DNA of 64,000 bases from positions 1-64,000 of the IMG/VR virus record IMGVR_UViG_3300032287_003113; one strand, written 5' to 3'. The position numbers and the translations under genes were made by a program. Numbering within the stretch: position 1 is the first letter of the stretch; every line of letters begins with the position of its first letter. Below the pieces are notes generated by a model, which saw nothing but the letters and a program-made list of their open reading frames with translations, had not been told where the DNA came from and did not search any database. Below are positions 19,643 through 44,895 of the stretch, piece after piece.

Positions 19643-19645
19643 AGC

Positions 19646-26297: not shown

Positions 26298-26300
26298 AAA

Positions 26301-27287: not shown

Positions 27288-27340
27288 GGGATTCTCCAAT
27301 AGGATTTTGTATTATATATTTATACTTGCGCCTAGGATTC

Positions 27341-31432: not shown

Positions 31433-32062
31433 ATGAAAAATCTTGTCTACTATCCAGATTTGCCCTCAATTCCTGAACACCTGTTGGTTGATGTTGAAAA
31501 AATAGTGTTAGAACGTATTGCCAATGATCCGCCACATCCAAATCCGTTGTGTCAAAGAGAAATGGCTGTTTCTCGCGGTGAAGAAAAAATTGTAGGTGGG
31601 CGATATCGCGGAGACGAAGCAGATGAACCACTACAATCTTGGGTTAGAGAAAATATTGGTGATGATCTAGCACCAAAAGCACGAGTACGGATTGCCAGCC
31701 ACGGGGAACAAGGAAATTTAAGTGTTCCACACAGTGATGCTTCTAGAGATTGGAGTCTGTTATATCTTGTCAATTTAGGTGGTGACAACGTGGAAACAAT
31801 TTTTTGGCAAGAAAAAAATCAACCAGTGAGACGACCAAATGCAACTTTTCCTCCTAGCTATGATGATTTGATTGAACTAGAACGTGTGACATTCCCTAGT
31901 CATACTTGGGTCATGCTTGACTCATTGGTTTTACACAGCATAGAAAACATGGAAAGTTTGCGTATAGCAGTACAGGTAGGATTCAAAGACGGTAGCACAA
32001 CTCTACAAAAAATTTGGCCTGAAAGAGATTGGTCTGAACTACAAGTGCCATATTCTAATTAA
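31433..32062 (+). CDS. 2OG-Fe(II)/cupin-like oxygenase
   Basis: PHSD...LHSIEN..R facial-triad pattern. Confidence 0.55.
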   Translation: MKNLVYYPDLPSIPEHLLVDVEKIVLERIANDPPHPNPLCQREMAVSRGEEKIVGGRYRGDEADEPLQSWVRENIGDDLAPKARVRIASHGEQGNLSVPHSDASRDWSLLYLVNLGGDNVETIFWQEKNQPVRRPNATFPPSYDDLIELERVTFPSHTWVMLDSLVLHSIENMESLRIAVQVGFKDGSTTLQKIWPERDWSELQVPYSN

Positions 32063-32064
32063 TT

Positions 32065-32295
32065 TTAAACAGCACCATTCTTTATTGTCAATAACATAGT
32101 TTCGTAGCTGGCATTAAATGCATGAATTGTTGTTGAGCAACAGGCCAAATAAGTTTGATTTTTTATTTCTTGACTGTTGCTAGCCACAAAACAATGTTGT
32201 CCAAACGCCGCAGGATAAAATTGCACAGTTGAATTTGTTTCAATATCAAATTTAATTGTTTGTCCAGGTTCCAGTATCAACTCCATATTTTGCAC
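32065..32295 (-). CDS. Hypothetical protein
   Basis: 76 aa, overlaps the upstream gene. Confidence 0.45.
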   Translation of the reverse strand: MQNMELILEPGQTIKFDIETNSTVQFYPAAFGQHCFVASNSQEIKNQTYLACCSTTIHAFNASYETMLLTIKNGAV

Positions 32296-33008
32296 CCTAG
32301 ATGTTGATTTTTTTGTGCATCAAAATTCATAATAAGAGTGTATCGTGGAAGATTGCTAAGATTGGCAGTATGATGCGGAATCCCCCAATCCCAGGTAAAC
32401 GCTTGCCCTTGTTTCCAAAAGCCAAAATTATGATTTCCAATGATAAAATATTGTCCGGGAACATGGTCTTCTAAAAATACTACCAACCTACGTTCTCCAG
32501 GATCTCGATAAGGATCTGTTTGATCTGTTGTGTTATTGTAAACATGATCTATGTGGTCCATGGTAACATCGCCTGGACGTTGGATAGCTACACGTAACAT
32601 AACATTGAGCATGTGATTACCGTGACTTTTTATAATCTTGACTCCCAATTGCTGTTCAACTGTGGCAACAATGTCAGGGCACTGGTCTGTGTCAATATAA
32701 TGACTGGTAAACCAAGGACGGCTTTTATCAAATATTTTACCTGTCAAATCCGGCAATGCTTTATCAAAGTCTGCTTGTAAAATTGGATTGTTAAATTTTT
32801 TAGAAGAGTCTGAATAAAAATTTCCATCAAATGTCTTTGATCTTGTTGATTTCGTTTTTAACTCCAACAGAGCCTGACAAACATCTGCTGACAAAGTACG
32901 ATCAATGTGTATATAGTCTGATCCATGTTGCGATGGCTTATTGATATCGAAATGCCAATGTCCTTTGTTAAAATGCACAATTGATCTTGGTGTAAGTTTA
33001 ACGGTCAT
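32277..33008 (-). CDS. 2OG-Fe(II)/Asp-beta-hydroxylase-like oxygenase
   Basis: QRPG...HID, VFLED..PGQ, W..G, PHHTAN....RYTL. Confidence 0.65.
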   Translation of the reverse strand: MTVKLTPRSIVHFNKGHWHFDINKPSQHGSDYIHIDRTLSADVCQALLELKTKSTRSKTFDGNFYSDSSKKFNNPILQADFDKALPDLTGKIFDKSRPWFTSHYIDTDQCPDIVATVEQQLGVKIIKSHGNHMLNVMLRVAIQRPGDVTMDHIDHVYNNTTDQTDPYRDPGERRLVVFLEDHVPGQYFIIGNHNFGFWKQGQAFTWDWGIPHHTANLSNLPRYTLIMNFDAQKNQHLGCKIWS

Positions 33009-33011
33009 GAT

Positions 33012-33959
33012 TTATTTTTGACCCAATGGTAGCCAAATTTTTCTTAGACGTTCTATGTGTCGATTAAATCCTGCAGTGGTTGTTTCGTCTGGATTTGAAA
33101 AAATAAAATTTTCATTATGATAGAGTTTTACTTCATCAGTTTCTAATGCCCGGCTAAACGTTGTTTGATACCAAGACACAATTTCAGGCGGTGTACCAGG
33201 AGGCAACATCAGTGCCCATGCTGCAAAAATATCAATGCCTTTTCCTTTGATCCTCAATGGTTCTACCATTGGTAGTTTGGCCAGTTTTTTATCTCCAGTA
33301 ATAGCAATAATTTTTACTTTACCAGCTTCTATCAACGGACGGGCAACACTAATTGGCATGATGCCAAATTCAATATTAGATTCCGATGCTACACCGGTCA
33401 CAGCTTGCAACGGACCTTGAAAGTTTACATGGCCGACTAAATTTTTATTTGCTTCTCCGTTGAGTATAATATATTCAAGCGCCAAGCGATGTACTGGACT
33501 ACCTACTGCAACATTAACTGGTTTTCCAGGACTTTTTATATATGATAAAAATTCAACAGGTGTATTTACACGACTACCGGGGTGTGCCACTATCGCTAAT
33601 GGACTTTTTGCCATGCCCATCACATTGGTAAAACTGTTGTATTCCCAACGCTTCAGATCTTTTTGCCAGATATCATTGCCTATGTAGGTTGCAAAATAAC
33701 TGGGAACACTGATGGTGTATCCATCAGGTGCAGCTTCATACAATGCATTACTGGCCAACACAGTATCTGCACCAGGTTTGTGTTCTATTATATATTGAAA
33801 GGTTGGATGACTTTTCTGTACTTGCGTGGCCAGCAATCGAAACTGAATTTCGTTGCCGCTGCCGGGAGCGAATCCAATTATTACTCTCACGGGTTTGGTG
33901 GGTTCCCATGCCCAGGCCATGATAGGAACCATAAGAAAAACAAACAATAATTTTTTCAT
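33012..33959 (-). CDS. Bug/TctC tripartite tricarboxylate transporter substrate-binding protein
   Basis: Signal peptide, PTKPVRVIIGFAPG, EHKPGA, APDGYT, PPGTP. Confidence 0.88.
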   Translation of the reverse strand: MKKLLFVFLMVPIMAWAWEPTKPVRVIIGFAPGSGNEIQFRLLATQVQKSHPTFQYIIEHKPGADTVLASNALYEAAPDGYTISVPSYFATYIGNDIWQKDLKRWEYNSFTNVMGMAKSPLAIVAHPGSRVNTPVEFLSYIKSPGKPVNVAVGSPVHRLALEYIILNGEANKNLVGHVNFQGPLQAVTGVASESNIEFGIMPISVARPLIEAGKVKIIAITGDKKLAKLPMVEPLRIKGKGIDIFAAWALMLPPGTPPEIVSWYQTTFSRALETDEVKLYHNENFIFSNPDETTTAGFNRHIERLRKIWLPLGQK

Positions 33960-33981
33960 TTTTTCTCCGATTAATTGATTT

Positions 33982-34530
33982 TTACAACAAAAACAAATTT
34001 GATATTTCAGTCGGTAACCAAGGTGTGTTCATACGTTCTGGATGCCAAACTACACCTGCAATACGTTGATCGATCCAAGCTTCGCAGTGACCACTGCTGT
34101 CATACACTAGTCCAGTTGCAGTTGAATGTAGTTGTGCAATAGCCTGGGTGTGATACGAATTTACTGTGTGTTCTTGTCCAAAATATTCAACGGCGTGTTC
34201 TGTGTCCATGTGACCTTCACATGCATTAACCTGTCCGCCCAGTGCATCTGTAAGTAAAAATGCGCCATGACAAACTCCCAAAATTGGTTTCTGTTGTTTC
34301 ATCACAGCAGTGGCCAATTTAAATTCAACAGTTCGTCTGATTGCACTATCGTCACCGCCGGTGATAATCAAACAGTCGTGACCGTCGGCTAATTGTTCAA
34401 AATCTTGATCGAGTCTATTGGGAATAAAAGAAAGCGTGTGATTTTTTAAATAACGATACCAACCGTGTTCTATGCTATCGTATGCCCTACCTTTGTGATA
34501 CAGAACTCTTTGTGTAAGAGCTATCTTCAA
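33982..34530 (-). CDS. Class I glutamine amidotransferase (peptidase C26/PuuD-like)
   Basis: ITGGD, ILGVCHG, VNSYH, WHPE. Confidence 0.88.
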   Translation of the reverse strand: MKIALTQRVLYHKGRAYDSIEHGWYRYLKNHTLSFIPNRLDQDFEQLADGHDCLIITGGDDSAIRRTVEFKLATAVMKQQKPILGVCHGAFLLTDALGGQVNACEGHMDTEHAVEYFGQEHTVNSYHTQAIAQLHSTATGLVYDSSGHCEAWIDQRIAGVVWHPERMNTPWLPTEISNLFLL

Positions 34531-34531
34531 A

Positions 34532-35242
34532 TTACCAACCGTAGGCTTCTGCTGCTAATTCACGAGCGCCAGGACTATCGCAAGTATTGCCAACAATAAT
34601 GTCGTATAACTCTTTACGCATTTTAGCAGCCATGGCCAAAGCACGTTCAGCAACTTCTGGGTTTTCGTCTTGCAACCGTTCTAAACGAAGTGCACCAATG
34701 TTGGCATGGAATGCTTCATCTTTGCCAATGCGATTGTATTTTTCAGCAACAAAAGAATCATAGGCACCAATTTCACTCATTGTTAACCAGCTGGTACTGG
34801 CACGACCTTCGGCAATTATTTGATAAACAGCCAAGGCCACTTCGTCTTGGGCAGTTTCGTACGATTTCATTGTGGCAGCACCTTTGTCGTTGGCTTTGCG
34901 ACTAAATTCACGATCTAAATATTCTTGAGTGTTGACTTCTGCACCGGTAATGTGCTCTAACACTTCCTTGACCAAACGGAAGTGTGTCGCTTCATCTTGA
35001 GCTTGTTTGGCCAACAGCAACATTTCTTCAGCAGGAGCTGAAGTTGGAAGATTGGCAATTGCTTCAGCGACACCGACCATGTTCATGTATTCATTGGCTA
35101 AACGACCTTGGAAATGCAACAGGTATTCTTCTTTTGTGCGTGCCGGATCGTTGAACCAATGGCGAATGTTCATTTTGCTTGCTTCAAATAATGGCTTGTT
35201 TTCTTCTTGTATTTTTAGTACTAGTTCTTTGCCGGTCAGCAT
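34532..35242 (-). CDS. Ferritin-like diiron protein
   Basis: NE...DEATH...AE...DEAFH paired ExxH motifs. Confidence 0.8.
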   Translation of the reverse strand: MLTGKELVLKIQEENKPLFEASKMNIRHWFNDPARTKEEYLLHFQGRLANEYMNMVGVAEAIANLPTSAPAEEMLLLAKQAQDEATHFRLVKEVLEHITGAEVNTQEYLDREFSRKANDKGAATMKSYETAQDEVALAVYQIIAEGRASTSWLTMSEIGAYDSFVAEKYNRIGKDEAFHANIGALRLERLQDENPEVAERALAMAAKMRKELYDIIVGNTCDSPGARELAAEAYGW

Positions 35243-35317
35243 AGGAATCTCTCCAAATTAATTCAGTATATGTATTTATGTTTATTTGCAATTTATAAAA
35301 CATAAATAGTTTACTCA

Positions 35318-35911
35318 ATGGATAAAAAATGGTTTTTTTACGGCTGTGCTGACAATGAGTTTACTGTTACGTATGCTCTGTATGAGCACACTTCTGACTG
35401 TTTTTTTCTAGTAGATACAGACGAAAAATCCATGAAAGATTTGGCTTTTTTGTTTTCCAGTAGATATCAACTAACAATTTGCCAGCTTAACACCGCACAC
35501 AATTATTTACCTGAGCTAATAGACAATACAGTATGTGTAAATTGGACTTTGACCAACAAACAAGACATTCCTATCGCTAGATTTCCACGTCCACATATGA
35601 TTGTTTCCGCAGAAGGCCTGGTTGAAAAATCGAATAACAATTTGCCATGGAATTACAACAACGAACAAAATTACTTGATGGCTGCAAAACATTGGTTGTC
35701 CCACCCTGCACTCAAAGGATATCCTACTGCTCTTGCTCACTGGGGTGATTTTTACCACACTTCTTCAATGGTGCCAGGAGCACCATTTGAAAATCGATTT
35801 GTATATACATTGTCCCAAATTAAAAAAATAATTTATCAAGAATTCGATCTACCAACTGCTCACCAAAAAATTAATCAACTGTTGACGACATATGAATTTG
35901 ATATACATTAA
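35318..35911 (+). CDS. Hypothetical protein
   Basis: 197 aa; CATAAATA late-type motif upstream. Confidence 0.55.
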   Translation: MDKKWFFYGCADNEFTVTYALYEHTSDCFFLVDTDEKSMKDLAFLFSSRYQLTICQLNTAHNYLPELIDNTVCVNWTLTNKQDIPIARFPRPHMIVSAEGLVEKSNNNLPWNYNNEQNYLMAAKHWLSHPALKGYPTALAHWGDFYHTSSMVPGAPFENRFVYTLSQIKKIIYQEFDLPTAHQKINQLLTTYEFDIH

Positions 35912-37043
35912 TAGCAGAGTCGATTTGACTGCATACGAAAAACAGCTAGGCATTCAGTTCTGTCAAGAGTTTACAAACTATCAAACTATTTCTCAACAGC
36001 TATGGTATGAACAACATTTCCCACACAATCGTTCTGGAGTTGATCCAATTTGGAGTCTTCAAACCCCCAAAAAATACCAACTGTGTTTGCCCTCCTTTTG
36101 TCATAACAAAACATTTGAGGATATCACAGATCAACGTGCAATCGAATTAATCAATCGTTGCCAACAAAAAAATCAACCCATGTTTATTACGTGGTCGGGC
36201 GGGATTGACAGTACTTTGATAGTTGCTGCATTATTTAAACATGCCGATCGAGAATATCTAAAACAGATAACTGTGCTAATGAACAATTCCAGTTATTATG
36301 AGAATCCTGTATTTTTTGATCGTATAATTTCTCCTTATTTTTCCTACAACAATATTGATCATGCAATTTGTCATTGGAAAGATTCTGTTGTTGTTAGCGG
36401 ACAACCGGCAGATCAAATGTGGATTCACGCAGATATTGTCAAACTTGAAAATCGCTTTCCAGGGGCCGGAGATATTGACCCACACACTGATCCGGATTTG
36501 CTATTGGATTTTCTTTCAAAAAAAAGCAATAAGAATCATGCTGAATGGTTTTATTGGCTAGTTTTAAATACTGCTGCCGAAGCAAAAATTTCAATTGTTA
36601 GCTATAGAGATTTTTTCTGGTGGGCAAATTTTAATTTTTACACCGTGGGAAACTGTTTAAAATCATACCTGGCTGAAGCTGAATGTTTCAACAACGAACA
36701 GTTTTTATTGTATCAGCAAAATTACATACCCTGGTTCTTGACAGACGACTACCAATTTTGGAGCATACACAATAACAATACTGGAGTTAAAATGTTGCAG
36801 GGCCTAGGAAGCTACAAATTGGTTGCAAAAAAATATATACTGGAAGTAGATAATAATCAATACTACTATCATTACAAATACAAAACAGGCAGTCCCAACC
36901 AGCATTTGTTTGCACAGAAAAAAACTACCGAAGATAAAATTAAAAAAGTTTTTGCGTTATATGATGATGGATCTGCTGTTATGTCAGATGATTCCAAGTC
37001 AATTGGTCAATTAATTTTGAACAATATCAATCTTTATCATTGA
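35892..37043 (+). CDS. Adenine-nucleotide alpha-hydrolase (PP-loop) protein
   Basis: WSGGIDST, VVSGQPADQ, K..AKKYI; resembles asparagine synthetase C-domain. Confidence 0.7.
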   Translation: MNLIYINSRVDLTAYEKQLGIQFCQEFTNYQTISQQLWYEQHFPHNRSGVDPIWSLQTPKKYQLCLPSFCHNKTFEDITDQRAIELINRCQQKNQPMFITWSGGIDSTLIVAALFKHADREYLKQITVLMNNSSYYENPVFFDRIISPYFSYNNIDHAICHWKDSVVVSGQPADQMWIHADIVKLENRFPGAGDIDPHTDPDLLLDFLSKKSNKNHAEWFYWLVLNTAAEAKISIVSYRDFFWWANFNFYTVGNCLKSYLAEAECFNNEQFLLYQQNYIPWFLTDDYQFWSIHNNNTGVKMLQGLGSYKLVAKKYILEVDNNQYYYHYKYKTGSPNQHLFAQKKTTEDKIKKVFALYDDGSAVMSDDSKSIGQLILNNINLYH

Positions 37044-37066
37044 TCAAATAATAAATACCTATTCCC

Positions 37067-38362
37067 ATGCAAAACAAAATAGAACATACCTCCGTTGCCG
37101 GTGTTAACTTTGAACCTAATAAAAAACTGGGCTACTATTTGGTCGACAACCAAATCTATTACAACAAATATCATGCGTTATTAAACGCATCTAAACAGAA
37201 ACAATCTATAAAATGGTTCTTTAACGAAGATGTGTTTGTACGTTACCCGTGGCACATTGAACCAGAAGAATCTTTAGATGAGTTGTATCGTCAAAGAGCA
37301 CAACAACTTAGAGATGAATATGATTATATTCGAGTGGAGTCCTCGGGTGGGTCTGATAGCACTACAGTTATTTTTAGTTTTCTACTTAATAACATACCAC
37401 TAGACGAAGTGGTATTTCGATATCCCAAAGGTGGAGACAAGGATGTAGTAGGAAATGCTCGAGACCTACGCAGTGAAAATACTCTAAGCGAATGGGAGTT
37501 TGCAGCAAAACCGTTGCTAGATTGGATTGCTACAAACTATCCTGGTGTTAAAATTACTGTGTATGATTACGCAGGAACTTTAGTGCGTGAAGCCGAAGAG
37601 AAGGATGAAAGTTGGGTGTTCCGTACTAGACACTATTTACAACCCGGTCACATAAACAAATACCAAGCCATAGCCATAGACGACCATAAACGGTTAGTTG
37701 AAAAGAACCTGCGGATTTGTGTGTTATGGGGTGTTGATAAACCTAAAATTACTGTCAAAGACGGAAAGTTTTTTTTATATTTTCATGACGGGCAAGCCAG
37801 TCATAGCGATCAAGCGATAGGCGAATACACCAACATAACCAATGAATTTTTTTATTGGAGCCCTGACGCCTGCAAATTATTGGCCAAACAAGCACATTCA
37901 ATAAAAAACTGGTTTGAAATGCCCGCCCACTATAATATGCAAAACGTATTACATTGGCCCAATTCAAACTTTAGTGGTAGAACTATCTACGAACAAATTG
38001 TTAAAAGTGTAATTTATTCTAAATACGATTTGCAAACATTTCAAACCAATAAGCCAACTAACAATATTTGGAACGAAATGGATTATTGGTTCCATCACAA
38101 TTTTAAAGATACTCAAGCATATCGTGTATGGGAATCTGGTATTGACTATTTGATCTCTACCTTGGATCCTGCATTTGTTGAAAACCTACACGGTCGACCG
38201 ACCAATATCATGATGTTTGAAACCCCAATGTATTATTTTGGAGATAGCAATATACCTAATTTGGCCTTGCCGTTCACTCCCGGGGCAGATCTTAAAGAGA
38301 AAAGAGTCGATTCTTCTAAGCAACATAGACACGTGATCAACGGACGCCTGGTAATTTATTAA
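37067..38362 (+). CDS. PP-loop (ANH) protein, paralog A
   Basis: LYRQRAQQLRDEYDYI..SGGSDS, GVDKP, EFFYW. Confidence 0.7.
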   Translation: MQNKIEHTSVAGVNFEPNKKLGYYLVDNQIYYNKYHALLNASKQKQSIKWFFNEDVFVRYPWHIEPEESLDELYRQRAQQLRDEYDYIRVESSGGSDSTTVIFSFLLNNIPLDEVVFRYPKGGDKDVVGNARDLRSENTLSEWEFAAKPLLDWIATNYPGVKITVYDYAGTLVREAEEKDESWVFRTRHYLQPGHINKYQAIAIDDHKRLVEKNLRICVLWGVDKPKITVKDGKFFLYFHDGQASHSDQAIGEYTNITNEFFYWSPDACKLLAKQAHSIKNWFEMPAHYNMQNVLHWPNSNFSGRTIYEQIVKSVIYSKYDLQTFQTNKPTNNIWNEMDYWFHHNFKDTQAYRVWESGIDYLISTLDPAFVENLHGRPTNIMMFETPMYYFGDSNIPNLALPFTPGADLKEKRVDSSKQHRHVINGRLVIY

Positions 38363-38363
38363 T

Positions 38364-38439
38364 TGGTGCCCTGGGTAGGATTCGAACCCACAATGTCCGC
38401 TCGGTAAAGCGGTGACTATACCATTTTGTCTACCAGGGT
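38364..38439 (-). tRNA. Non-canonical tRNA (6-nt anticodon loop, identity uncertain)
   Basis: T-arm GTGGGTTCGAATCCTAC, CCA end, anticodon arm CCGCT-TTACCG-AGCGG, A1:C72 mismatch. Confidence 0.7.
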
Positions 38440-38441
38440 GT

Positions 38442-38516
38442 TGGTTGCGGGGGACAGATTCGAACTGTCGATCTCCAGGTTATGAGCCTGACGGGTTGCC
38501 TCTTCCCTACCCCGCG
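38442..38516 (-). tRNA. tRNA-Met(CAU), initiator-like
   Basis: CGCGGGG 5' end, C1:A72 mismatch, CT-CAT-AA loop. Confidence 0.88.
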
Positions 38517-38521
38517 ATAAA

Positions 38522-39124
38522 CTACATTGCAGGACCGTTGCCGTTCCTAAATCCTATTTCACCGCCTTCAGCTTCGATACGCTTGACGACATCTTCGAAC
38601 AAGATAGGTGCAAAATCAGTTTGTTCCACACACACGCAATGATAACGGACATCAATCCATTGCCTTACTCCGCGGGTCATAAACTCGTGTGTGGTTTGTG
38701 CTGTTTTCATCACACGATTGGCGTGAGTGTGTCCGTGGATGTTGACACCAAAACGACCCAGGCTTTCCTCATGGATAGGGATATGACTGAGTATCATTCC
38801 GTTCATCACATGGTAAGCACGAAGCTCACGGAAGTGTTCACGATAGTCGGTGTCCTTGAAGATATCGTGGTTACCGCGGATAAGAACCTTGTCTCCGTTG
38901 AGCCTACGCATGATAGCAAGACTCTTGCGGCTCATAACAACATCGCCCAAGTGATACACTTTGTCGTTGGGCCTTACACGCTCGTTCCAGGCTGCGACCA
39001 TGAACTCGTCCATTTCCGCTGGATCGGTCCAAGGACGTAGTTTGGTCACACCATCGTTGCGTGTGAAGCGACATACACCTGCGTGTCCAAAATGCGTGTC
39101 GCTGACTAAAAATACTGCTGGCAT
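38522..39124 (-). CDS. Calcineurin-like metallophosphoesterase
   Basis: SDTHFGH, HLGD, GNHD, HGHTH. Confidence 0.9.
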   Translation of the reverse strand: MPAVFLVSDTHFGHAGVCRFTRNDGVTKLRPWTDPAEMDEFMVAAWNERVRPNDKVYHLGDVVMSRKSLAIMRRLNGDKVLIRGNHDIFKDTDYREHFRELRAYHVMNGMILSHIPIHEESLGRFGVNIHGHTHANRVMKTAQTTHEFMTRGVRQWIDVRYHCVCVEQTDFAPILFEDVVKRIEAEGGEIGFRNGNGPAM

Positions 39125-39147
39125 ACGTGCTTCCTTTCTTTAAAATT

Positions 39148-39225
39148 TGGAAGTGAGGGTCGGATTTGAACCGACGGTTTTAGGGATTTGCAGTCCCTTG
39201 CATTGGGCCACTCTGCCACCTCACT
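39148..39225 (-). tRNA. tRNA-Cys(GCA)
   Basis: AGGGA-CTGCAAA-TCCCT, U73, CCA. Confidence 0.92.
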
Positions 39226-39233
39226 ACTGTTAC

Positions 39234-39307
39234 TGGAGCGGGATATCGGAATCGAACCGATGACGAAAGATTGGAAATCTTTAGTTTTGCCCCTAAACTA
39301 ATCCCGC
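39234..39307 (-). tRNA. tRNA-Gly(UCC)
   Basis: AAAGA-TTTCCAA-TCTTT, U73, CCA. Confidence 0.92.
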
Positions 39308-39322
39308 TTAGGATTTACCACT

Positions 39323-39396
39323 TGGCGGGTCGCAAAGGAATCGAACCTCTACCCGCGGTTTTGGAGACCGCTGTTCTGCCACTAAACTAGCAACCC
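39323..39396 (-). tRNA. tRNA-Trp(CCA)
   Basis: GCGGT-CTCCAAA-ACCGC, G73, CCA. Confidence 0.92.
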
Positions 39397-39403
39397 ATAA
39401 TAC

Positions 39404-39479
39404 TGGCGCTCCCGACCGGATTCGAACCGGTGTACTCGCCGTGAAAGGGCGATGTCCTAGGCCTCTAGACGACGGGAGC
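39404..39479 (-). tRNA. tRNA-Glu(UUC)
   Basis: TCGCC-CTTTCAC-GGCGA, CCA. Confidence 0.92.
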
Positions 39480-39485
39480 CTAACT

Positions 39486-39569
39486 TGGTGGAGAATACTG
39501 GGATCGAACCAGTCGTGCCATAGGCGCCGGATTTACAGTCCAGTGCATCACCATTGATGCTTCTTCTCC
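39486..39569 (-). tRNA. tRNA-Tyr(GUA)
   Basis: CTGGA-CTGTAAA-TCCGG, long variable arm, CCA. Confidence 0.92.
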
Positions 39570-39575
39570 AAAACT

Positions 39576-39652
39576 TGGCGGAGTAGACGGGACTCGAACC
39601 CGCGACCCTCGGCGTGACAGGCCGATATTCTAACCAACTGAACTACCACTCC
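39576..39652 (-). tRNA. tRNA-Asp(GUC)
   Basis: TCGGC-CTGTCAC-GCCGA, CCA. Confidence 0.93.
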
Positions 39653-39661
39653 AATACTACT

Positions 39662-39690
39662 ATTATACATTAAACGGATTTAATGGTCGG
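39662..39690 (-). promoter_or_regulatory. Promoter for the tRNA array
   Basis: TATAAT ~9 nt before tRNA-Asp; degenerate -35 CCGACC at 17-bp spacing. Confidence 0.6.
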
Positions 39691-39760
39691 TACTCACTGC
39701 TTATCGTAGATTGTTTGCCCAAAAAACGTACCGGTCATTTTCATAACCTCAATCCACTTA

Positions 39761-39928
39761 TCAGCGTGGGGGGTATTTCGACCCCCTTGCAGAATTCTTT
39801 ACTGTTGCAAGTTCTGCCAACGCTTTTATTTGTGCTTCTACTCTTGCTAACTTTGCTTCTAGTAACGCCGCTTTATCTTCCGGTGAGAGGACAAAATGCG
39901 AAAACTCTTTTTTAATTTTGCGTTCCAT
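39761..39928 (-). CDS. Small coiled-coil protein
   Basis: MERKIKK... with AGGAG RBS. Confidence 0.55.
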   Translation of the reverse strand: MERKIKKEFSHFVLSPEDKAALLEAKLARVEAQIKALAELATVKNSARGSKYPPR

Positions 39929-39946
39929 TTGCTTCTCCTTTATAAA

Positions 39947-39980
39947 CAAAAAACCCCGGAGTGTTTAATTCCAGGGTTTT
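39947..39980 (-). terminator. Intrinsic terminator/attenuator hairpin
   Basis: AAAACCCTGGA...TCCGGGGTTTTTTG. Confidence 0.75.
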
Positions 39981-40005
39981 GGTTAAAATACGGTAATATG
40001 TATGT

Positions 40006-40104
40006 CTATCCAACACCCTTCAAGTGCTCTAAATTGCGATCAAGCCAACGGCCTAGCACACACAGCACTACGGTCGCATAAATTTCATGAAGGTAATTTT
40101 TCAT
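40006..40104 (-). CDS. Putative leader peptide (32 aa)
   Basis: MKNYLHEIYATVVLCVLGRWLDRNLEHLKGVG between a consensus promoter and a terminator. Confidence 0.45.
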   Translation of the reverse strand: MKNYLHEIYATVVLCVLGRWLDRNLEHLKGVG

Positions 40105-40113
40105 TGTTTTCAT

Positions 40114-40142
40114 ATTATACAATTATTTATCTTTATTGTCAA
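40114..40142 (-). promoter_or_regulatory. Consensus sigma70 promoter
   Basis: TTGACA-N17-TATAAT. Confidence 0.85.
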
Positions 40143-40145
40143 CCT

Positions 40146-40442
40146 CTAGGCTGACATAATAGCGATAGTGCTTTTAACAAACCTATATTTGGCAACAAAG
40201 GCATTGATAAAACTGATCCATTCTTCGGCGGCAGATTGATCAGTGAACAGCCTAGTCGATATCAATGATGAACCTTTGCTCTCAACCATCGTATCTGCGG
40301 ACATTTTGCCAACAGCAATCATTTCCGCAGTCTTTGCATCTAATTCGGCTAACGCTACAGAATCATTTTCATTTCTATCGTTTGGATTCGAGTTAATATA
40401 ATTATCTCTTTGCCAGGTAATTTTAACTTTTTTTGTGTACAT
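40146..40442 (-). CDS. Hypothetical protein
   Basis: 98 aa; R.FTDQSAAEEW motif; follows the split dctP. Confidence 0.55.
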   Translation of the reverse strand: MYTKKVKITWQRDNYINSNPNDRNENDSVALAELDAKTAEMIAVGKMSADTMVESKGSSLISTRLFTDQSAAEEWISFINAFVAKYRFVKSTIAIMSA

Positions 40443-40445
40443 ATT

Positions 40446-41401
40446 TTAAGCCTTTTTAATCTTGTCAATCAAACCAGGTGAAAATGTTGGTTCAAACTTT
40501 TCATAAACTGCTTGAGCTTTATGTTTCCACTCAGCTGTTTCTTCTTTGGAAAGTTCAATAACATCAATACCATCAGCAACCAATTGCTGTTTGGCATCTT
40601 CACCATCCTGGATCGTGACTTCACGTTCTCTACGTCCTGCTTTGATAGCAGCATCCTTGATCACGGCTTGAACCTCGGGACTCAATGTCTTCCAGAAGTC
40701 GTCACGCATGATCATGGTTGTCAAAAACAAACTGTGCTTTGAGTCAATCACGCTTTTGGTAACGTCATTCTGCTTCAAGGGATAGATACGACTGTAAACA
40801 GTTTCTCCACCTTCGCAATCACCTTCGATAATGTGGGCACGAGTGTCTTCGGTTTCACAAACAAACACGTCAACACCGCCCAAGACCTTGAATGTCTCTT
40901 GTGCTACTGGATTACGATTGGTTCTTAGCTTCATTTCTTGCCTAGATCATCTAGACCAGAGACTGGTTTGTCAACAATAATGTTACGGAAACCGCCTGAG
41001 TAAGTGAATGCCATACCGCGAACATTGGACTTTTCAGTGATCTTTTCTAATAGACCTTCGCCAACTTCACCCTCTAGCACACGAGTTGCATGATCGTGAT
41101 CTTCAAAAATAAATGGCATTTCTAAGGCCAACATATCGTGCTCAATATCTTCAGCCAACCATGTGGTGTACATTTGGCTCATTTCAATCTTGCCCTGTTC
41201 CATTAGGTCCAGTAGATCGTGTTTGGTAACCAACACACCGTCGTTGTACTTCATGCTGTACTCGCTTAGTGTCATAACTTCAACTTCGATCTTTTCTGCA
41301 CTTTGAGCTTCGTTTACAAAACGCTGAAAGTCTTCTGCTGCACGTACAAATAGGCTTAGTGGCTCGTGAGCAATTACCCAACGAATTTTAGTAGTTTTCA
41401 T
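40446..41401 (-). pseudogene. DctP-family solute-binding gene split by a 1-nt frameshift (40931-41401 plus 40446-40934)
   Basis: The halves are colinear with the intact paralog at 26301; the junction AAG AAA TGA AGC would read KKMKLR with one extra A. Confidence 0.7.
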
Positions 41402-41526
41402 GTGTATTTCCTTTATATATAAATTAAGGCGGCGTTCCGGTGTAACACACCAGTAAAAGGGTAGTTACCCTAGGCGTCTGACGTCAACTGAATGTCGGCG
41501 TTGCTACAATTATTTAGCTTTTCTTG

Positions 41527-42438
41527 TTATTTGTCCAGTTTAACTGTAGCACTCAAACGGCGCCATAGTACCAGCTGACTGTTGTACCAGTTGTCTAGCT
41601 CAGAATCTGGAATTTGATTGTTAGGAATACAAGTATCTGCGGCATTGGCATCACGTACACTTTTGCTACGTGCAGCTTCTACAAAAATCTTGCGAATTTC
41701 ACGAAACTTTTCTTCAGGAAATTTGCGTGGAATAAAGATCTGTTGCGAGCTACTCATGTCTGCAATTGCCGGTGCAAATCCTTGATTTTTCAACAAGGGA
41801 ATACCTTTAATACTTTCTTTGCCGGTCATGCCCAACCAATAAACCCGTTTGGTAGCGTCTGGCTTTGTGTACTGCTCGCTATCGCCAATGAATCCCACAG
41901 CAAAATCAGTTTGCCCACCCAAGACATTTAACAATGCTTCGTTGGTGCTTTTAAACGGAACAATCTGCATGTTTGGATATTGTGCAGCCACTTGCAAGGC
42001 TACCAGGTGCGTGGTTGCCCCAAGTCCACTGATACCAATGTTTAACTTGGCGTTTCGAGGAACATCCTTCCATGTTTTATACTTTGTGCTTGTGATAACA
42101 AACGGTGCAATACACATGGGCATTAGGCTTCTAAAGTCGGCCATGTTATGACTTTCCGTTGGAAACAGGTTGGGACGGATAAATCCTGCCGAACTGTTGA
42201 TCCAGATTGAGTTGGGAGTGTTTAACACATGGTTGGCTGCAACTGTGCCGCCTGCGCCAGGTTTAGCTTCAAAGATGAATGTGTATTTGTTTTGTAACTT
42301 GTTACTTTCGTCGGCTAGTGTGCGATAGAAGTTTGCTGCAATGTCAGCTGGAGACCAAGAATAATACATAACAATGTTTTCTTTGGCTGTTGCTGTTAAT
42401 GTAAATGTGGCTAGTAGTGCAACCAATAGTTTTTTCAT
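41527..42438 (-). CDS. Bug/TctC-family substrate-binding protein
   Basis: Signal peptide MKKLLVALL..., EAKPGAGG, G.G...HL, VPFK, VLGGQTD. Confidence 0.82.
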   Translation of the reverse strand: MKKLLVALLATFTLTATAKENIVMYYSWSPADIAANFYRTLADESNKLQNKYTFIFEAKPGAGGTVAANHVLNTPNSIWINSSAGFIRPNLFPTESHNMADFRSLMPMCIAPFVITSTKYKTWKDVPRNAKLNIGISGLGATTHLVALQVAAQYPNMQIVPFKSTNEALLNVLGGQTDFAVGFIGDSEQYTKPDATKRVYWLGMTGKESIKGIPLLKNQGFAPAIADMSSSQQIFIPRKFPEEKFREIRKIFVEAARSKSVRDANAADTCIPNNQIPDSELDNWYNSQLVLWRRLSATVKLDK

Positions 42439-42448
42439 TTGATTTTCC

Positions 42449-43639
42449 TTAAAATTTATAGTGTACGTTACGACCAGAGTCTTGATATACTGCATCGCCC
42501 AAGTAATAAAATGGACTGATAAATCCCACAAAGCCCACTGCTCGACCCATTTCGTAATTGAAATACTTGGCGTCAATCGAATCGGTTAATAATTTATGCC
42601 CAGCTTGCCATGCTCGGTAAGCATGAGTATCCTGAAAGTTTGTGTAAAACCAATAGTCCATTTCGTTATAAAAACTGTTGGTGGGCTTGCTGGTTTGGAA
42701 CGTTGTAGGATCGTAGTCGGGATAAATCAGGGGTTTAACAATGTGTTCGAATGTGGTACGTTGTGCAAAACTGTAGTTGGGCCAACGTACCAAGTGCTGT
42801 AGATATTTATTTGATTCTTGGTTGAACCAGTTTTTTATTGTGTGTGCTTGTTTGTTGACCAGGTCTGGCAAGTCTGGCGCCCAAAAGAAATACACATTGG
42901 CAATGTTGGTGTAGTGTTTGATGTCAGGGTTGGCAGCATTGGCCTGTATGTCCATGAAGTACAGATACCACTTTGAATCTCGGATACAGACCTTGGGCTT
43001 GTCAACACCCCATAACATACATATTCGCTTACCAGAGTCTAGCAATAGTTTATGTTCGTGTACTGCATCAACTGTGTGTTTGAACGGATGCCCGGGTTGG
43101 AAATAGTCTCTAGTTTTAAACACCCATGACTCATCATGTTCACTGGCCAGCATGTCCTCACTGTAGTCGTGTACTGTAATTTTGACTTGAGGATAGTTGG
43201 TAGCAATCCATTCTAGTGTAGGTCTGGCAGCATACTCCCATTCACTCAGTGTGTTCTCCGGTTTGGTGTTGAATGGATCTGCTGATACATTCTTTTCACC
43301 TGTTTTGGGATAACGAAATACCACTTCGTCTAACGGAATGTTATTGAGTAAAAACGAATACAATACTGTGTTGCCATCAGCACCGCCACTTAGTTCTAAA
43401 CGAATGTAATCGTATTCATCTCTAATTTGCTGTGCCCGTTGCCGATACAACTGTTGTAGATCAGTTTCAGGTTCTGTTAGCCAATCATGTGCGTCAAATA
43501 CTGTGCGGTTAAAATGCCACTCAGGAAAGACGTTGGTTTTTGTACCCGCAATTAGGGCTTCTACCTTGCTGTAGTATCGGGTATCTCCAACTTGGTAAAA
43601 GCCTAATTTAGGATTTTGTTCAATGGTGTACTGCATCAA
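42449..43639 (-). CDS. PP-loop (ANH) protein, paralog B
   Basis: SGGADG; shares LYRQRAQQ.RDEYDYIR, ENTLSEWE, WGVDKP and FQT.KPTN with 37067-38362. Confidence 0.7.
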   Translation of the reverse strand: MMQYTIEQNPKLGFYQVGDTRYYSKVEALIAGTKTNVFPEWHFNRTVFDAHDWLTEPETDLQQLYRQRAQQIRDEYDYIRLELSGGADGNTVLYSFLLNNIPLDEVVFRYPKTGEKNVSADPFNTKPENTLSEWEYAARPTLEWIATNYPQVKITVHDYSEDMLASEHDESWVFKTRDYFQPGHPFKHTVDAVHEHKLLLDSGKRICMLWGVDKPKVCIRDSKWYLYFMDIQANAANPDIKHYTNIANVYFFWAPDLPDLVNKQAHTIKNWFNQESNKYLQHLVRWPNYSFAQRTTFEHIVKPLIYPDYDPTTFQTSKPTNSFYNEMDYWFYTNFQDTHAYRAWQAGHKLLTDSIDAKYFNYEMGRAVGFVGFISPFYYLGDAVYQDSGRNVHYKF

Positions 43640-43647
43640 TTGTAGAA

Positions 43648-44154
43648 TTAACTGTTCAAAACTTTGGCAACACTATTCATAACACTAGCAATACGTCCGA
43701 TGTCACGTAGGTTTTCTACTGTGTATCCTTCTTGCTTGAGTGTTTCATAGTGTGCTTTCACACAGAAGTGGCACTTGCCAACAATACTAGCTGCCAGGCT
43801 AAATGCTTCAAAGTTTGACTTGGTAGTTCCGCCATGACTAGCAATAGCGTTCATGCGTAACTGTGCTGGCAGGCCTTTAAGAGCAGGATCGTCAGCCATT
43901 TCAACATATGGATACCACACATTGTTTTGTGCCATAATACTTGCGGCAGTCATTGCTGACTCTGCATGCACCGGTGCGTCTGCTAAAATCAAACTGACTA
44001 GTTTGCCGTTGCCTGTTGCGGCCAATGCGGCTACAGCACAACCCATAGCCACATCCGCATCCAATGTGCTACGCACTAGAACAGCATCAAGATTTAACTT
44101 GGTGTCCTTTGCGTAGTCTGGCAACGCTTCTTTGACGGCGTCGTTGAAAGCCAT
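43648..44154 (-). CDS. ahpD: Alkyl hydroperoxide reductase AhpD
   Basis: LPDYAKD.KLNL, NNVWY, LRMN, CHFCV.AH. Confidence 0.92.
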   Translation of the reverse strand: MAFNDAVKEALPDYAKDTKLNLDAVLVRSTLDADVAMGCAVAALAATGNGKLVSLILADAPVHAESAMTAASIMAQNNVWYPYVEMADDPALKGLPAQLRMNAIASHGGTTKSNFEAFSLAASIVGKCHFCVKAHYETLKQEGYTVENLRDIGRIASVMNSVAKVLNS

Positions 44155-44693
44155 TATAGTGTTTCTCCGCCCACTGTACGATTACATGCACACAGTTCGC
44201 CAGTTTGTAACGCATCTAATACACGCAATGTTTCTTCTGGTGAGCGACCAACATTCAAGTTGTTGACAGTAACGTGTTGGATAACGTTGTCTGGATCAAC
44301 AATGAATGTGGCGCGAAGTGCGGCACCTGCTGGCGCATAGAAGCAACCTAATTGTTCGATCAAGCTCAACTCACCACGCTGTGTGTCAGCAAACTGGGTG
44401 TGAGTAATTTTCTTCAAATCCGCATGTGCGTTTTGCCATGCTACCTTGCAGAACTCATTGTCTGTGCTACCTGTTAGCAGGACTGCATCACGATCTGCAA
44501 AGTCACCTGCTAGTTTATCGTATGCAACAATTTCTGTTGGGCATACGAATGTGAAGTCTTTTGGATAGTAAACAATTACTTTCCACTTGCCTTCAAATGA
44601 TTTTTCTGTAATATCAAAGAAAGCGTCTTCTGGTTGTCCTGGCTTAACGCCTGTGACTGTAAATGCTTCTAATTTATGTCCTACTGTTTTCAT
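44154..44693 (-). CDS. ahpC: Peroxiredoxin AhpC
   Basis: YPKDFTFVCPTE, RATFIVDP, VGRS, LCAC. Confidence 0.95.
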   Translation of the reverse strand: MKTVGHKLEAFTVTGVKPGQPEDAFFDITEKSFEGKWKVIVYYPKDFTFVCPTEIVAYDKLAGDFADRDAVLLTGSTDNEFCKVAWQNAHADLKKITHTQFADTQRGELSLIEQLGCFYAPAGAALRATFIVDPDNVIQHVTVNNLNVGRSPEETLRVLDALQTGELCACNRTVGGETL

Positions 44694-44727: not shown

Positions 44728-44812
44728 TGGTGCCCCAAGCGAGACTTGAACTCGCACACCTTGCGGTACCGGCTTCTAAGACCGGCGTGTCTGCCAATTC
44801 CACCATCGGGGC
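44728..44812 (-). tRNA. tRNA-Leu(UAG)
   Basis: CCGGT-CTTAGAA-GCCGG, long variable arm, CCA. Confidence 0.92.
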
Positions 44813-44817
44813 ATGTT

Positions 44818-44895
<78 letters not shown>

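What the first reader, a model, noticed from the sequence alone, without database searches (positions are those of the whole stretch)
31433..44693. Duplicated enzyme-plus-receptor module: candidate phage small-molecule synthesis and sensing system
Seen: one operon of diiron ferritin-like enzyme, glutamine amidotransferase, Bug/TctC binding protein and 2OG-Fe(II)-like enzyme, divergent from hypothetical, PP-loop, PP-loop genes. A second operon runs ahpC-ahpD, PP-loop paralog, Bug, structured leader, DctP, small protein. A further DctP plus redoxin sits at 25770-27287. No TctA/B or DctQ/M membrane genes are in the window. Known: PP-loop ANH enzymes (AsnB, GuaA, NadE, TilS, lasso cyclases) adenylate substrates and often take ammonia from a glutamine amidotransferase; Bug and DctP bind small carboxylates. 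Inference: the phage makes or modifies a small carboxylate/amide metabolite (or tRNA/peptide) and carries dedicated binders, e.g. for signalling or counter-defence.
Basis: partly seen in the sequence, partly recalled or inferred. Interest (0 to 1): 0.85.

Follow-up and report, generated by a model that had tools for sequence, protein, structure and literature searches.

The report
Phage organic-acid uptake and conversion cassettes
A jumbo freshwater phage carries two copies of a gene cassette, found in many aquatic phages, that pairs organic-acid binding proteins of a bacterial importer with uncharacterised enzymes; it looks like a nutrient uptake-and-conversion kit rather than a sensing system, and its substrate is unknown.

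Summary
Operon 1 is diiron protein, GATase, Bug1 and a 2OG-like gene, divergent from a 197-aa gene, PP1 and PP2. Operon 2 is AhpC, AhpD, PP3, Bug2, a structured leader, DctP2 and a 98-aa gene. A redoxin-DctP1 pair lies upstream.

- DctP2 is split into two ORFs, and both are under purifying selection.
- Both DctPs lack signal peptides.
- tRNA genes and a phosphoesterase separate the two modules.

Main result: the same families recur around a phage-encoded TctA permease in 103 viral loci (20 TctA lineages at 70% identity). Examples are diiron-GATase-TctA-Bug-2OG, PP2-TctA-Bug-DctP and 197aa-PP1-TctA-Bug-DctP. The two window operons are these cassettes without TctA.

Family assignments:
- PP2/PP3 belong to a large, almost purely viral, unannotated PP-loop family with an AsnB/beta-lactam-synthetase-like fold.
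- The diiron protein keeps all six metal ligands and resembles UndA, CADD and R2lox.

Best reading: an auxiliary module that imports and chemically converts an unknown carboxylate. A sensing or signalling role has no support.

Novelty: a new variant of a known kind (phage transporter auxiliary genes). The leaderless, split DctP and the new PP-loop family are its unusual features.

The parts
25770..26297 (-). Prx5/redoxin-like protein, conserved partner of DctP1
   Evidence: Pfam Redoxin E 2.5e-5, below cutoff. Adjacency to DctP1 is kept in L004, L008, L009/L010 and L020 at 30-67% identity.
26301..27299 (-). DctP1: intact TRAP-type (DctP family) solute-binding protein without a signal peptide
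   Evidence: Pfam DctP E 3.9e-37. Matches PDB TRAP binding proteins. 117 of 119 homologues have at most 13 residues before the first strand; the YSGG[FY]R arginine is invariant in 120/120.
30304..31383 (-). 359-aa protein of unknown family, the conserved divergent neighbour of PP2 in relatives
   Evidence: Abuts PP2 in L004, L020, L021 and L022. Homologues occur in 14 TctA loci. No Pfam or PDB match.
31433..32062 (+). 209-aa protein of unknown family
   Evidence: No family match. Homologues lie near TctA in L036 and L048 and next to a PP-family gene in L020.
32277..33008 (-). 2OG/Fe(II)-oxygenase-like (AspH-like) protein; strain-variable
   Evidence: Pfam AspH E 4.5e-4, below cutoff. H152-x-D154, H212 and R222 are invariant in 19 homologues. 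The family is in 49 of 103 TctA loci. Absent from strains L002/L003 as a 948-bp indel, 32067-33014.
33012..33959 (-). Bug1: TctC/Bug-family binding protein with an N-terminal signal peptide
   Evidence: Pfam TctC E 1.4e-26. Best PDB matches are Bug27 and other TTT binding proteins. The hydrophobic leader is visible in the translation.
33982..34530 (-). Class-I glutamine amidotransferase / peptidase C26-like protein
   Evidence: Pfam GATase E 8e-14 and Peptidase_C26 E 1e-12. Closest NCBIfam is gamma-glutamyl-CDP-amidate hydrolase at 66 bits, cutoff 250. Always next to the diiron gene.
34532..35242 (-). Ferritin-like / heme-oxygenase-like diiron oxidase
   Evidence: Six invariant ligands. AF2 pLDDT 90. 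Foldseek hits UndA, TenA-like, CADD, R2lox, HrmI and ADO at TM about 0.6. Homologues sit next to TctA in L023, L024, L065, L098, L106, L115, L121 and L123.
35318..35911 (+). 197-aa protein, conserved upstream partner of PP1
   Evidence: No family match. Paired with PP1 in L015 and L073.
35892..37043 (+). PP1: PP-loop (SGGIDS) ATP-pyrophosphatase-like protein, a distinct subfamily
   Evidence: Weak NCBIfam AsnB and LarE hits. hhalign to the PP2 family gives probability 91.5% over the PP-loop region. Found next to TctA in L073, L091 and L106.
37067..38362 (+). PP2: member of a large phage-specific AsnB-like PP-loop family
   Evidence: 514 homologues, all unnamed and without Pfam. 1764 clusters at 50% identity. 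S93-G94-G95-x-D97 invariant. Fold evidence.
40146..40442 (-). 98-aa protein ending operon 2
   Evidence: Conserved downstream of the DctP2 C half in L001-L004. No family match.
40446..40934 (-). DctP2 C half (own start codon)
   Evidence: Pfam DctP profile positions 138-284. Own ATG or GTG at the same residue in L004 and L006. dN/dS 0.04-0.10. Duplicated in L004 and L021.
40931..41401 (-). DctP2 N half, leaderless
   Evidence: Pfam DctP profile positions 11-134. dN/dS 0.05-0.15. An unsplit orthologue exists in L128.
41402..41537 (-). Conserved promoter-like site and structured leader upstream of DctP2
   Evidence: TGGACA-17-AATAAT at 41537-41509. 73-81% column identity across relatives. In two hairpins, 6 of 12 pairs show compensatory change; 95.8% of cells are paired against 34-44% in slid controls. 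No Rfam family.
41527..42438 (-). Bug2: divergent TctC/Bug-family binding protein with a signal peptide
   Evidence: Pfam TctC E 6.7e-7. The leader is visible in the translation. Conserved next to PP3 in L004 and L020, and next to the split DctP2 in L004, L020 and L021 (L021 ends before a PP3 position).
42449..43639 (-). PP3: paralogue of PP2 (53% identity), with SGGADG in place of SGGxDS
43648..44693 (-). AhpD (43648-44154) and AhpC (44154-44693), co-directional and upstream of PP3
   Evidence: Pfam CMD and AhpC-TSA. NCBIfam AhpD subfamily E 1.9e-32. The link to the cassette is seen only in close relatives.

Best explanation
The region holds two TctA-less copies of a modular cassette that many aquatic phages carry. 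In its complete form the cassette is built around a tripartite tricarboxylate (TTT) importer.

Proposed working:
1. Bug1 and Bug2 are exported and capture an exogenous organic acid in the periplasm.
2. A TctA(B) permease takes the acid in. The permease would be the host's, or a phage copy outside the window.
3. In the cytoplasm the leaderless DctP proteins hold the ligand. DctP2 would act as an assembled N+C pair.
4. The AsnB-like PP-loop enzymes adenylate its carboxylate for amidation or ligation. PP1 would take ammonia from the neighbouring GATase.
5. The diiron and 2OG-type oxygenases oxidise it.

What is shown and what is inferred:
- Shown: family and fold assignments, signal-peptide status, the gene fission, and the recurrent gene linkage to TctA.
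- Inferred: direction of transport, order of steps, the role of the cytoplasmic DctP, and all chemistry.
- Unknown: the substrate.
For: 1. Complete cassettes exist in other viral contigs:
- L098: diiron-GATase-TctA-Bug-sulfotransferase-like-2OG.
- L054: desaturase-like-PP2 family-TctA-Bug-leaderless DctP.
- L073: 197aa-PP1-TctA-Bug-DctP.
- L024: diiron-GATase-TctA-Bug-like.
- L044: two PP2-family genes, then TctA and Bug-like.

2. Among 103 TctA-centred viral loci, the partner counts are: 2OG-like 49, Bug-like 28, diiron 8, GATase 7, PP2 family 8, PP1 3, DctP 3. These spread over 20 TctA clusters at 70% identity.

3. L054/L126 shares only the cassette genes with the window, at 35-52% identity, so the module moves between phage backgrounds.

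4. Bug1 and Bug2 have signal peptides. The DctP family is leaderless in 117 of 119 members and keeps the arginine that aligns with the GFR motif of solved TRAP binding proteins.

5. PP2 has a PP-loop fold closest to the carboxylate-adenylating AsnB, beta-lactam synthetase and carbapenam synthetase.

6. The diiron fold is closest to small-molecule oxidases that act on carboxylates or amino acids: UndA, CADD, HrmI and R2lox.

7. tctA and a 2OG-Fe(II) oxygenase were already listed as putative viral auxiliary genes of unknown role (PMC4164917).
Against: - No TctA or TctB is in the 64-kb window, nor in the +/-10 kb read in four relatives. Import by these Bug proteins therefore rests on an unseen permease.
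- PP2-family genes also occur without any transporter gene nearby (L005, L007, L136, L138).
- Fold matches for PP2 are weak (E about 1e-3, TM about 0.3).
- A cytoplasmic DctP has no characterised precedent that I could find.
- Many loci come from related aquatic phages, so part of the co-occurrence is shared ancestry.
- No ligand is identified.
Confidence: 0.55

Rival explanations
1. The phage synthesises its own small carboxylate or amide metabolite. The Bug and DctP proteins are dedicated receptors or sponges for signalling or counter-defence, not transporter parts.
For: - The DctP proteins are cytoplasmic and cannot feed a TRAP transporter.
- No permease is in the window.
- Binder and enzyme genes are tightly linked.
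- A regulated, structured leader precedes DctP2.
Against: - In other phages the Bug gene directly follows, and often overlaps, a TctA permease gene on the same strand (28 of 28 same strand, median gap 0). That is the layout of an importer.
- Bug1 and Bug2 are exported, not cytoplasmic.
- No sensor, regulator or known defence or anti-defence family was seen among the genes scanned. PADLOC was not run.
Confidence: 0.12
2. The enzymes belong to the neighbouring glycan island. The PP-loop enzymes amidate, and the oxygenases tailor, acidic sugars (uronic or nonulosonic acids) for a phage-directed surface or virion glycan. The binding proteins handle that acid sugar.
For: - The window is rich in sugar-nucleotide and glycan genes: C-methyltransferase, dehydratases/epimerases, GT17, GT34, FkbM methyltransferases, a cytidylyl/adenylyltransferase-cupin fusion, and several N-twitch radical SAM proteins.
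- Cassettes elsewhere sit beside GT2, sulfotransferase-like, APS-kinase-like and carbamoyltransferase genes.
- The 359-aa neighbour of PP2 recurs in 14 TctA loci.
- TRAP binding proteins include sialic-acid binders.
Against: - No PP protein matches the known N-acetyl-sugar amidotransferase models in NCBIfam.
- The glycosyltransferase nature of the 359-aa protein is only my reading of a motif; neither Pfam nor PDB supports it.
- A TTT importer is not needed for an internal sugar-nucleotide pathway.
Confidence: 0.15
3. There is no functional unit. The genes are unrelated accessory genes collected in a hypervariable region of related jumbo phages, and the apparent linkage reflects shared ancestry.
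For: - The block 31433-37043 is absent in L004, where the 359-aa gene abuts PP2.
- The 2OG gene is strain-variable.
- PP2-family genes often occur apart from transporter genes.
Against: - The same families re-associate in different orders and in unrelated backgrounds: Bug then PP with overlapping stop/start in L006, PP then Bug in the window, and PP-TctA-Bug-DctP in L054, which shares only cassette genes with the window.
- The associations span several TctA lineages.
Confidence: 0.08

Closest known systems
Tripartite tricarboxylate transporter (TctABC / Bug family, e.g. Bug27, BugD, TphC)
   Same: Bug1 and Bug2 are TctC-family binding proteins with signal peptides. Related phage cassettes carry TctA immediately upstream of the Bug gene.
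   Different: The window has no TctA or TctB. The genes are phage-borne. They are linked to a fixed set of uncharacterised enzymes and to a cytoplasmic DctP.
TRAP transporter binding proteins (DctP, SiaP)
   Same: Full-length DctP-family fold by Pfam and PDB sequence matches. The arginine of the G-F-R motif is retained.
   Different: No signal peptide across the whole phage clade, and no DctQ or DctM. One copy is split into separately initiated N and C halves, with extra C-half paralogues in relatives.
Asparagine synthetase B-type synthetase domain (AsnB, beta-lactam synthetase, carbapenam synthetase, lasso cyclases)
   Same: SGGxDS PP-loop preceded by the usual helix. These are the best Foldseek matches. 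The implied chemistry is adenylation of a carboxylate followed by attack of an amine.
   Different: No Ntn glutaminase domain and no Pfam or NCBIfam membership. There is a small N-terminal beta domain. The family is almost purely viral and multiplies to 2-4 paralogues per genome.
Ferritin-like / heme-oxygenase-like diiron oxidases (UndA, CADD, HrmI, R2lox, ADO)
   Same: Helical bundle with an E, ExxH, E, ExxH ligand set. TM about 0.6 to these enzymes.
   Different: Sequence identity is only 12-17%. It is invariably paired with a C26/GATase gene. The substrate is unknown.
Phage auxiliary metabolic genes for nutrient capture (cyanophage PstS; viral tctA and 2OG-Fe(II) oxygenase noted in SUP05 viruses, PMC4164917)
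   Same: The phage carries the periplasmic binding component of a host-type importer. tctA and a 2OG oxygenase were already flagged in viral contigs.
   Different: Here there is a whole recurring cassette with dedicated cytoplasmic enzymes and a cytoplasmic binder. I found no description of that cassette in the searched literature.

Membership tests
TTT transporter (TctABC) | TctC-family periplasmic binding protein (PF03401) with a signal peptide | tested here: met
   Bug1 E 1.4e-26 and Bug2 E 6.7e-7. PDB Bug and TctC matches. Hydrophobic leaders visible.
TTT transporter (TctABC) | TctA permease (PF01970) encoded with the binding protein | tested here: not met
   No tblastn hit in the window and none among the large ORFs scanned with Pfam. 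TctA is present at the equivalent position in other phages. The rest of the 220-357 kb genome could not be read.
TTT transporter (TctABC) | TctB small membrane subunit | not tested
   Small hydrophobic ORFs lie near TctA in L050 and L065 but were not compared with TctB.
TRAP transporter (DctPQM) | DctP-family binding protein (PF03480) | tested here: met
   DctP1 E 3.9e-37; DctP2 halves E 2.9e-15 and 6.8e-23.
TRAP transporter (DctPQM) | Binding protein is exported (signal peptide) | tested here: not met
   8 residues precede the first strand motif in 111 of 119 homologues, and at most 13 in 117 of 119.
TRAP transporter (DctPQM) | DctQ and DctM membrane subunits | tested here: not met
   No such Pfam hit among the ORFs of 150 aa or more that were scanned. 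Not every small ORF was scanned.
PP-loop ATP pyrophosphatase, AsnB-like | SGGxDS pyrophosphate-binding loop | tested here: met
   S93, G94, G95 and D97 are invariant in 23 PP2-family sequences. SGGIDST is invariant in PP1 relatives. PP3 has G in place of the final S.
PP-loop ATP pyrophosphatase, AsnB-like | Fold similarity to solved PP-loop synthetases | tested here: met
   Foldseek probability 0.9-1.0 to CarA, beta-lactam synthetase, AsnB, GuaA and NadE, but E about 1e-3 and TM about 0.3. BFVD 'asparagine synthase' at E 2.4e-4.
PP-loop ATP pyrophosphatase, AsnB-like | Match to a curated AsnB/Asn_synthase model, and an N-terminal glutaminase domain | tested here: not met
   No Pfam hit. NCBIfam asn_synth_AEB only for PP1, at E 0.008 and 15 bits against a cutoff of 267. 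The N-terminal 65 residues form a small beta domain.
Ferritin-like / HDO diiron oxidase | Two ExxH motifs plus two further carboxylates on a helical bundle | tested here: met
   E51, E84, H87, E145, E176 and H179 are invariant. All-helical model with pLDDT 90. Foldseek matches.
Class-I glutamine amidotransferase / peptidase C26 | Pfam domain above the gathering score | tested here: met
   PF00117 at 52 bits (cutoff 22.8) and PF07722 at 48.7 bits (cutoff 20.5).
gamma-glutamyl-CDP-amidate hydrolase (Cj1417 equivalog) | NCBIfam NF045546 score above its cutoff | tested here: not met
   66 bits against a cutoff of 250. No other phosphoramidate-pathway equivalog was seen.
2OG/Fe(II) oxygenase (AspH-like) | H-x-D...H metal triad and a 2OG-binding arginine | tested here: met
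   H152, D154, H212 and R222 are invariant in 19 sequences.
2OG/Fe(II) oxygenase (AspH-like) | Pfam PF05118 above the gathering score | tested here: not met
   20.5 bits against 22.6, and only 1 of 19 family members hits at all.

The most novel reading that the evidence does not exclude
The leaderless DctP proteins, one of them a two-piece protein with exchangeable C halves, are cytoplasmic high-affinity sinks. Together with the new PP-loop ligases they let the phage import, sequester and convert one specific metabolite. That metabolite could be a cofactor precursor such as a pyridine carboxylate for NAD, or a host signalling acid. The purpose would be to overcome host starvation or an immune response, which would make this a new class of phage 'capture-and-convert' system and the first cytoplasmic use of a TRAP binding-protein fold.
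Probability: 0.12. Interest if true: 0.85.

Novelty: new variant of a known kind. Interest (0 to 1): 0.62.

Why it matters
- Phage genes for nutrient capture are known mainly from single binding proteins such as PstS. Here a whole importer-plus-enzyme cassette recurs across freshwater and marine phages. It would give a function to viral tctA and 2OG-oxygenase genes, which have been listed as auxiliary genes of unknown role since 2014.
- It brings to light a very large, almost purely viral PP-loop family (at least 1764 clusters at 50% identity) with no annotation.
- It shows a TRAP binding protein working in the cytoplasm, and a naturally split version of one. Both are useful for understanding and engineering this fold.
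- Identifying the ligand would show which organic acid large aquatic phages need during infection.

Tried and rejected
**Searches that found nothing useful**
- Nucleotide and protein searches of GenBank phages with the region, PP2 and Bug1 found only tRNA matches.
- PHROGs gave nothing for ten proteins.
- PDB sequence searches with PP2 and with profiles of PP2 and PP1 gave only tag artefacts or bare PP-loop matches.
- Close-relative scans for a TctA in the window's own contigs found none, but cannot exclude one.
- Three PP-family look-ups landed on short contigs and added little.
- The literature searches found no description of the cassette or of a cytoplasmic DctP.

**Ideas considered and dropped**
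- Programmed frameshift or sequencing error for the DctP2 split. The frame offset differs between relatives (+2 in the window, +1 in L004 and L006). Each C half keeps its own start codon at the same residue. Relatives carry two C halves. Both halves have dN/dS at or below 0.15.
- Intrinsic terminator for leader hairpin 1. The T-run is not conserved, and the minimum-free-energy z-score of the whole leader is only -0.87.
- O-methyl-phosphoramidate pathway, suggested by the Cj1417-like best hit of the GATase. No equivalog reaches its cutoff.
- QueC, TilS, NadE or sugar-amidotransferase identity for the PP proteins. No NCBIfam or Pfam support.

Full report
**Setting**

The window comes from a T4-like jumbo phage. 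It carries:
- a T4-type large terminase, a UvsW-like helicase, a RecA-like protein and a chaperonin;
- at least 12 tRNA genes;
- a long stretch of accessory genes for sugar-nucleotide and glycan chemistry, and several radical SAM proteins with an N-terminal twitch domain.

The same sequence is present in IMG/VR contigs of 219,879 and 356,865 bp. GenBank phages have no counterpart of the region apart from tRNA genes.

**The observation**

Operon 1, on the minus strand:
- a ferritin-like diiron protein, 34532-35242;
- a class-I GATase / C26 protein, 33982-34530;
- Bug1, a TctC-family binding protein with a signal peptide, 33012-33959;
- a 2OG-oxygenase-like protein, 32277-33008.

It diverges from a 197-aa gene, PP1 (SGGIDS) and PP2 (SGGSDS) on the plus strand.

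Operon 2, on the minus strand, runs AhpC, AhpD, PP3 (53% identical to PP2), Bug2, a 125-nt intergenic element, DctP2 and a 98-aa gene. A redoxin-DctP1 pair lies at 25770-27299.

Four points were missed or need correcting.
1. DctP2 is two ORFs, at 40931-41401 and 40446-40934, joined by an ATGA overlap.
2. Both DctPs start a few residues before the first strand of the mature fold, so they have no signal peptide.
3. tRNA genes and a metallophosphoesterase separate the two modules.
4. The 2OG-like gene is a 948-bp presence/absence difference between near-identical strains.

**Family assignments**

The PP proteins match no Pfam, PHROG or NCBIfam model.
- PP2 has 514 unnamed homologues.
- A profile search finds 1764 clusters at 50% identity.
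- A scan of 185,579 species genomes finds it on three MAG contigs only.
- The PP-loop residues are invariant.
- An AlphaFold model (pLDDT 83) matches carbapenam synthetase, beta-lactam synthetase and AsnB first, then GMP and NAD synthetases. The scores are weak.
- In BFVD the family members are 'uncharacterized', and the next matches are 'asparagine synthase'.
- PP1 is a remote relative over the PP-loop region (hhalign probability 91.5%).

The diiron protein keeps E, ExxH, E, ExxH in all 21 aligned homologues. It folds with pLDDT 90. It resembles UndA, a TenA-like protein, CADD, R2lox, HrmI and aldehyde-deformylating oxygenase at TM about 0.6.

The 2OG-like family keeps H-x-D, a distal H and an R invariant. 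It is below Pfam's AspH cutoff.

**The decisive comparison**

Homologues of the diiron gene in other large viral contigs sit next to a TctA permease gene. A distant PP2-family gene does too.

I collected 103 TctA-centred viral loci and searched them with profiles and sequences of the window's genes.

| Partner family | Loci out of 103 |
|---|---|
| 2OG-like | 49 |
| Bug-like | 28 |
| 359-aa family | 14 |
| diiron | 8 |
| PP2 family | 8 |
| GATase | 7 |
| PP1 | 3 |
| DctP | 3 |
| 209-aa family | 2 |
| 197-aa family | 1 |

The loci fall into 20 TctA clusters at 70% identity. Per cluster, Bug-like occurs in 11, 2OG-like in 8, diiron in 4, PP2 family in 4, GATase in 3, PP1 in 3 and DctP in 2.

Gene orders are telling:
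- L098: diiron, GATase, TctA, Bug, sulfotransferase-like, 2OG-like.
- L054: desaturase-like, PP2 family, TctA, Bug with signal peptide, leaderless DctP.
- L073: 197aa, PP1, TctA, Bug, DctP.
- L065: TctA, Bug, diiron, GATase, then an ammonium transporter.

The window's operon 1 is the L098 arrangement without TctA; only 22 nt separate the GATase and Bug1 genes. Operon 2 is the L054 arrangement without TctA. L054 shares nothing with the window except the cassette genes, so the module moves between phage backgrounds.

Within the window's own clade:
- the block 31433-37043 is an insertion relative to L004;
- the redoxin-DctP1 pair and the PP3-Bug2-DctP2 order are conserved.

**The DctP proteins**

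Of 119 DctP1 homologues down to 54% identity, 117 have at most 13 residues before the first strand. The single long one looks like a mis-called start.

The arginine of YSGG[FY]R is invariant in 120 of 120. It aligns with the G-F-R of a solved TRAP binding protein. I take it to be the carboxylate-selecting arginine described for this family (PMC4646407). I did not verify this by superposition.

The DctP2 split is old and functional.
- It is present in L004, L006, L020 and L021.
- The C half always has its own ATG or GTG at the same residue.
- The frame offset differs between lineages.
- L004 and L021 carry two C-half paralogues.
- dN/dS is 0.04-0.15 for both halves.
- An unsplit orthologue flanked by PP-family genes exists on L128.

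**The leader**

The stretch between Bug2 and DctP2 is more conserved than the flanking genes. It starts with a promoter-like TGGACA-17-AATAAT and contains a TGACGTCA palindrome and two hairpins.

In the hairpins, 6 of 12 pairs change on both sides and 95.8% of cells pair. Slid controls give 34-44%. There are only six sequences, so this is suggestive rather than proof. No Rfam family matches.

**Interpretation**

The layout of an exported TctC-type protein directly after a TctA gene is that of an importer. The Bug proteins are therefore best read as the periplasmic capture step of uptake, not as sensors.

The cytoplasmic partners fall into two sets:
- diiron plus GATase, sometimes with PP1-197aa and the 2OG enzyme;
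- the PP2 family plus a leaderless DctP.

The nearest characterised relatives of the PP enzymes adenylate carboxylates and form amides. The nearest relatives of the diiron protein oxidise small carboxylates or amino acids. I therefore propose import of an organic acid, followed by cytoplasmic capture, ATP-dependent amidation or ligation, and oxidative tailoring.

GATase pairs with the diiron gene everywhere and with PP1 in some cassettes, but never with PP2/PP3.

Limits of this reading:
- The substrate, the order of steps and the role of the cytoplasmic DctP are inferences.
- The lack of TctA in the window and in four relatives is a real gap. Either the host permease is used, or a phage copy lies elsewhere in the genome, which I could not read.

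**Rivals**

- A biosynthesis-plus-sensing system remains possible, chiefly because the DctPs are cytoplasmic.
- A role in tailoring acidic sugars of the adjacent glycan island is also possible. Cassettes elsewhere sit beside glycosyltransferase, sulfotransferase-like and APS-kinase-like genes.
- Pure hitch-hiking of unrelated accessory genes is unlikely, because the genes re-associate in different orders and backgrounds.

**Novelty**

tctA and a 2OG-Fe(II) oxygenase were noted as putative viral auxiliary genes of unknown role in SUP05 viruses (PMC4164917). I found no description of the cassette, of the PP-loop family, or of leaderless or split DctP proteins. I rate it a new variant of a known kind.

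Noticed in passing
window 38364-38516, 39148-39652, 44728-44895, 25671-25744, 29266-29355: At least 12 tRNA genes. One at 38364-38439 is reported by ARAGORN with a two-base anticodon. There is a tRNA-Ser with anticodon ACT. One at 39489-39569 is seen only by Rfam, at 37 bits.
   Followed up: no
window 40142-40114 (-) and 44932-44904 (-): A perfect sigma-70 consensus (TTGACA-17-TATAAT) lies just upstream of the tRNA array. An 11/12 match lies upstream of tRNA-Met/tRNA-Leu and operon 2. tRNAs and cassette genes may therefore share transcripts.
   Followed up: no
window 27965-29260, 48872-50119, 50349-51521, 52586-53740, 17919-18776: Five radical SAM genes. 27965-29260 passes the NCBIfam N-terminal-twitch model and 52586-53740 also has an N-terminal SPASM/twitch match. 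48872-50119 and 50349-51521 are weak Radical_SAM matches only, and 17919-18776 has a C-terminal SPASM domain. The 27965 copy and its overlapping 127-aa partner are conserved in all relatives.
   Followed up: partly
window 14898-24708 and 46679-48192: A sugar-nucleotide and glycan island: C-methyltransferase, three dehydratase/epimerase genes, GT17 and GT34 glycosyltransferases, two FkbM methyltransferases, and a nucleotidyltransferase fused to a mannose-6-phosphate-isomerase-type cupin.
   Followed up: partly
window 32067-33014 versus L002 5945-5949: A 948-bp indel carries the 2OG-like gene. Nucleotide identity drops from 98.3% on the left flank to 89.8% across Bug1 on the right, which suggests allele exchange at this spot between strains.
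   Followed up: partly
L004 15002-15977; L021 18895-20343: Relatives carry one DctP2 N half followed by two different C halves (about 70% and 80-91% identical to the window's C half). This could let one N half combine with alternative C halves.
   Followed up: partly
window 56821-57822 and 58549-59577: Two further paralogues of the 359-aa protein family, the conserved neighbour of PP2. They were found through their similarity to a gene in L044.
   Followed up: no
L006 5823-6425; L016 68-1553; L050 5327-5986; L098 8297-8911: A roughly 200-aa P-loop family with a GAPGSKWSS motif and a weak Sulfotransfer_3 hit recurs inside the cassettes of other phages, sometimes with an APS-kinase-like gene. 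It has no homologue in the window.
   Followed up: partly
window 25119-25619 (-): A small outer-membrane beta-barrel-like protein with a signal peptide (OMP_b-brl, below cutoff) is encoded just downstream of the redoxin-DctP1 pair.
   Followed up: no
window 41487-41480 (-), inside the leader: A perfect 8-bp palindrome, TGACGTCA, is flanked by two AACGCCG direct repeats 66 nt apart. The arrangement is conserved in L004, L020 and L021 and could be a protein-binding site rather than RNA structure.
   Followed up: partly
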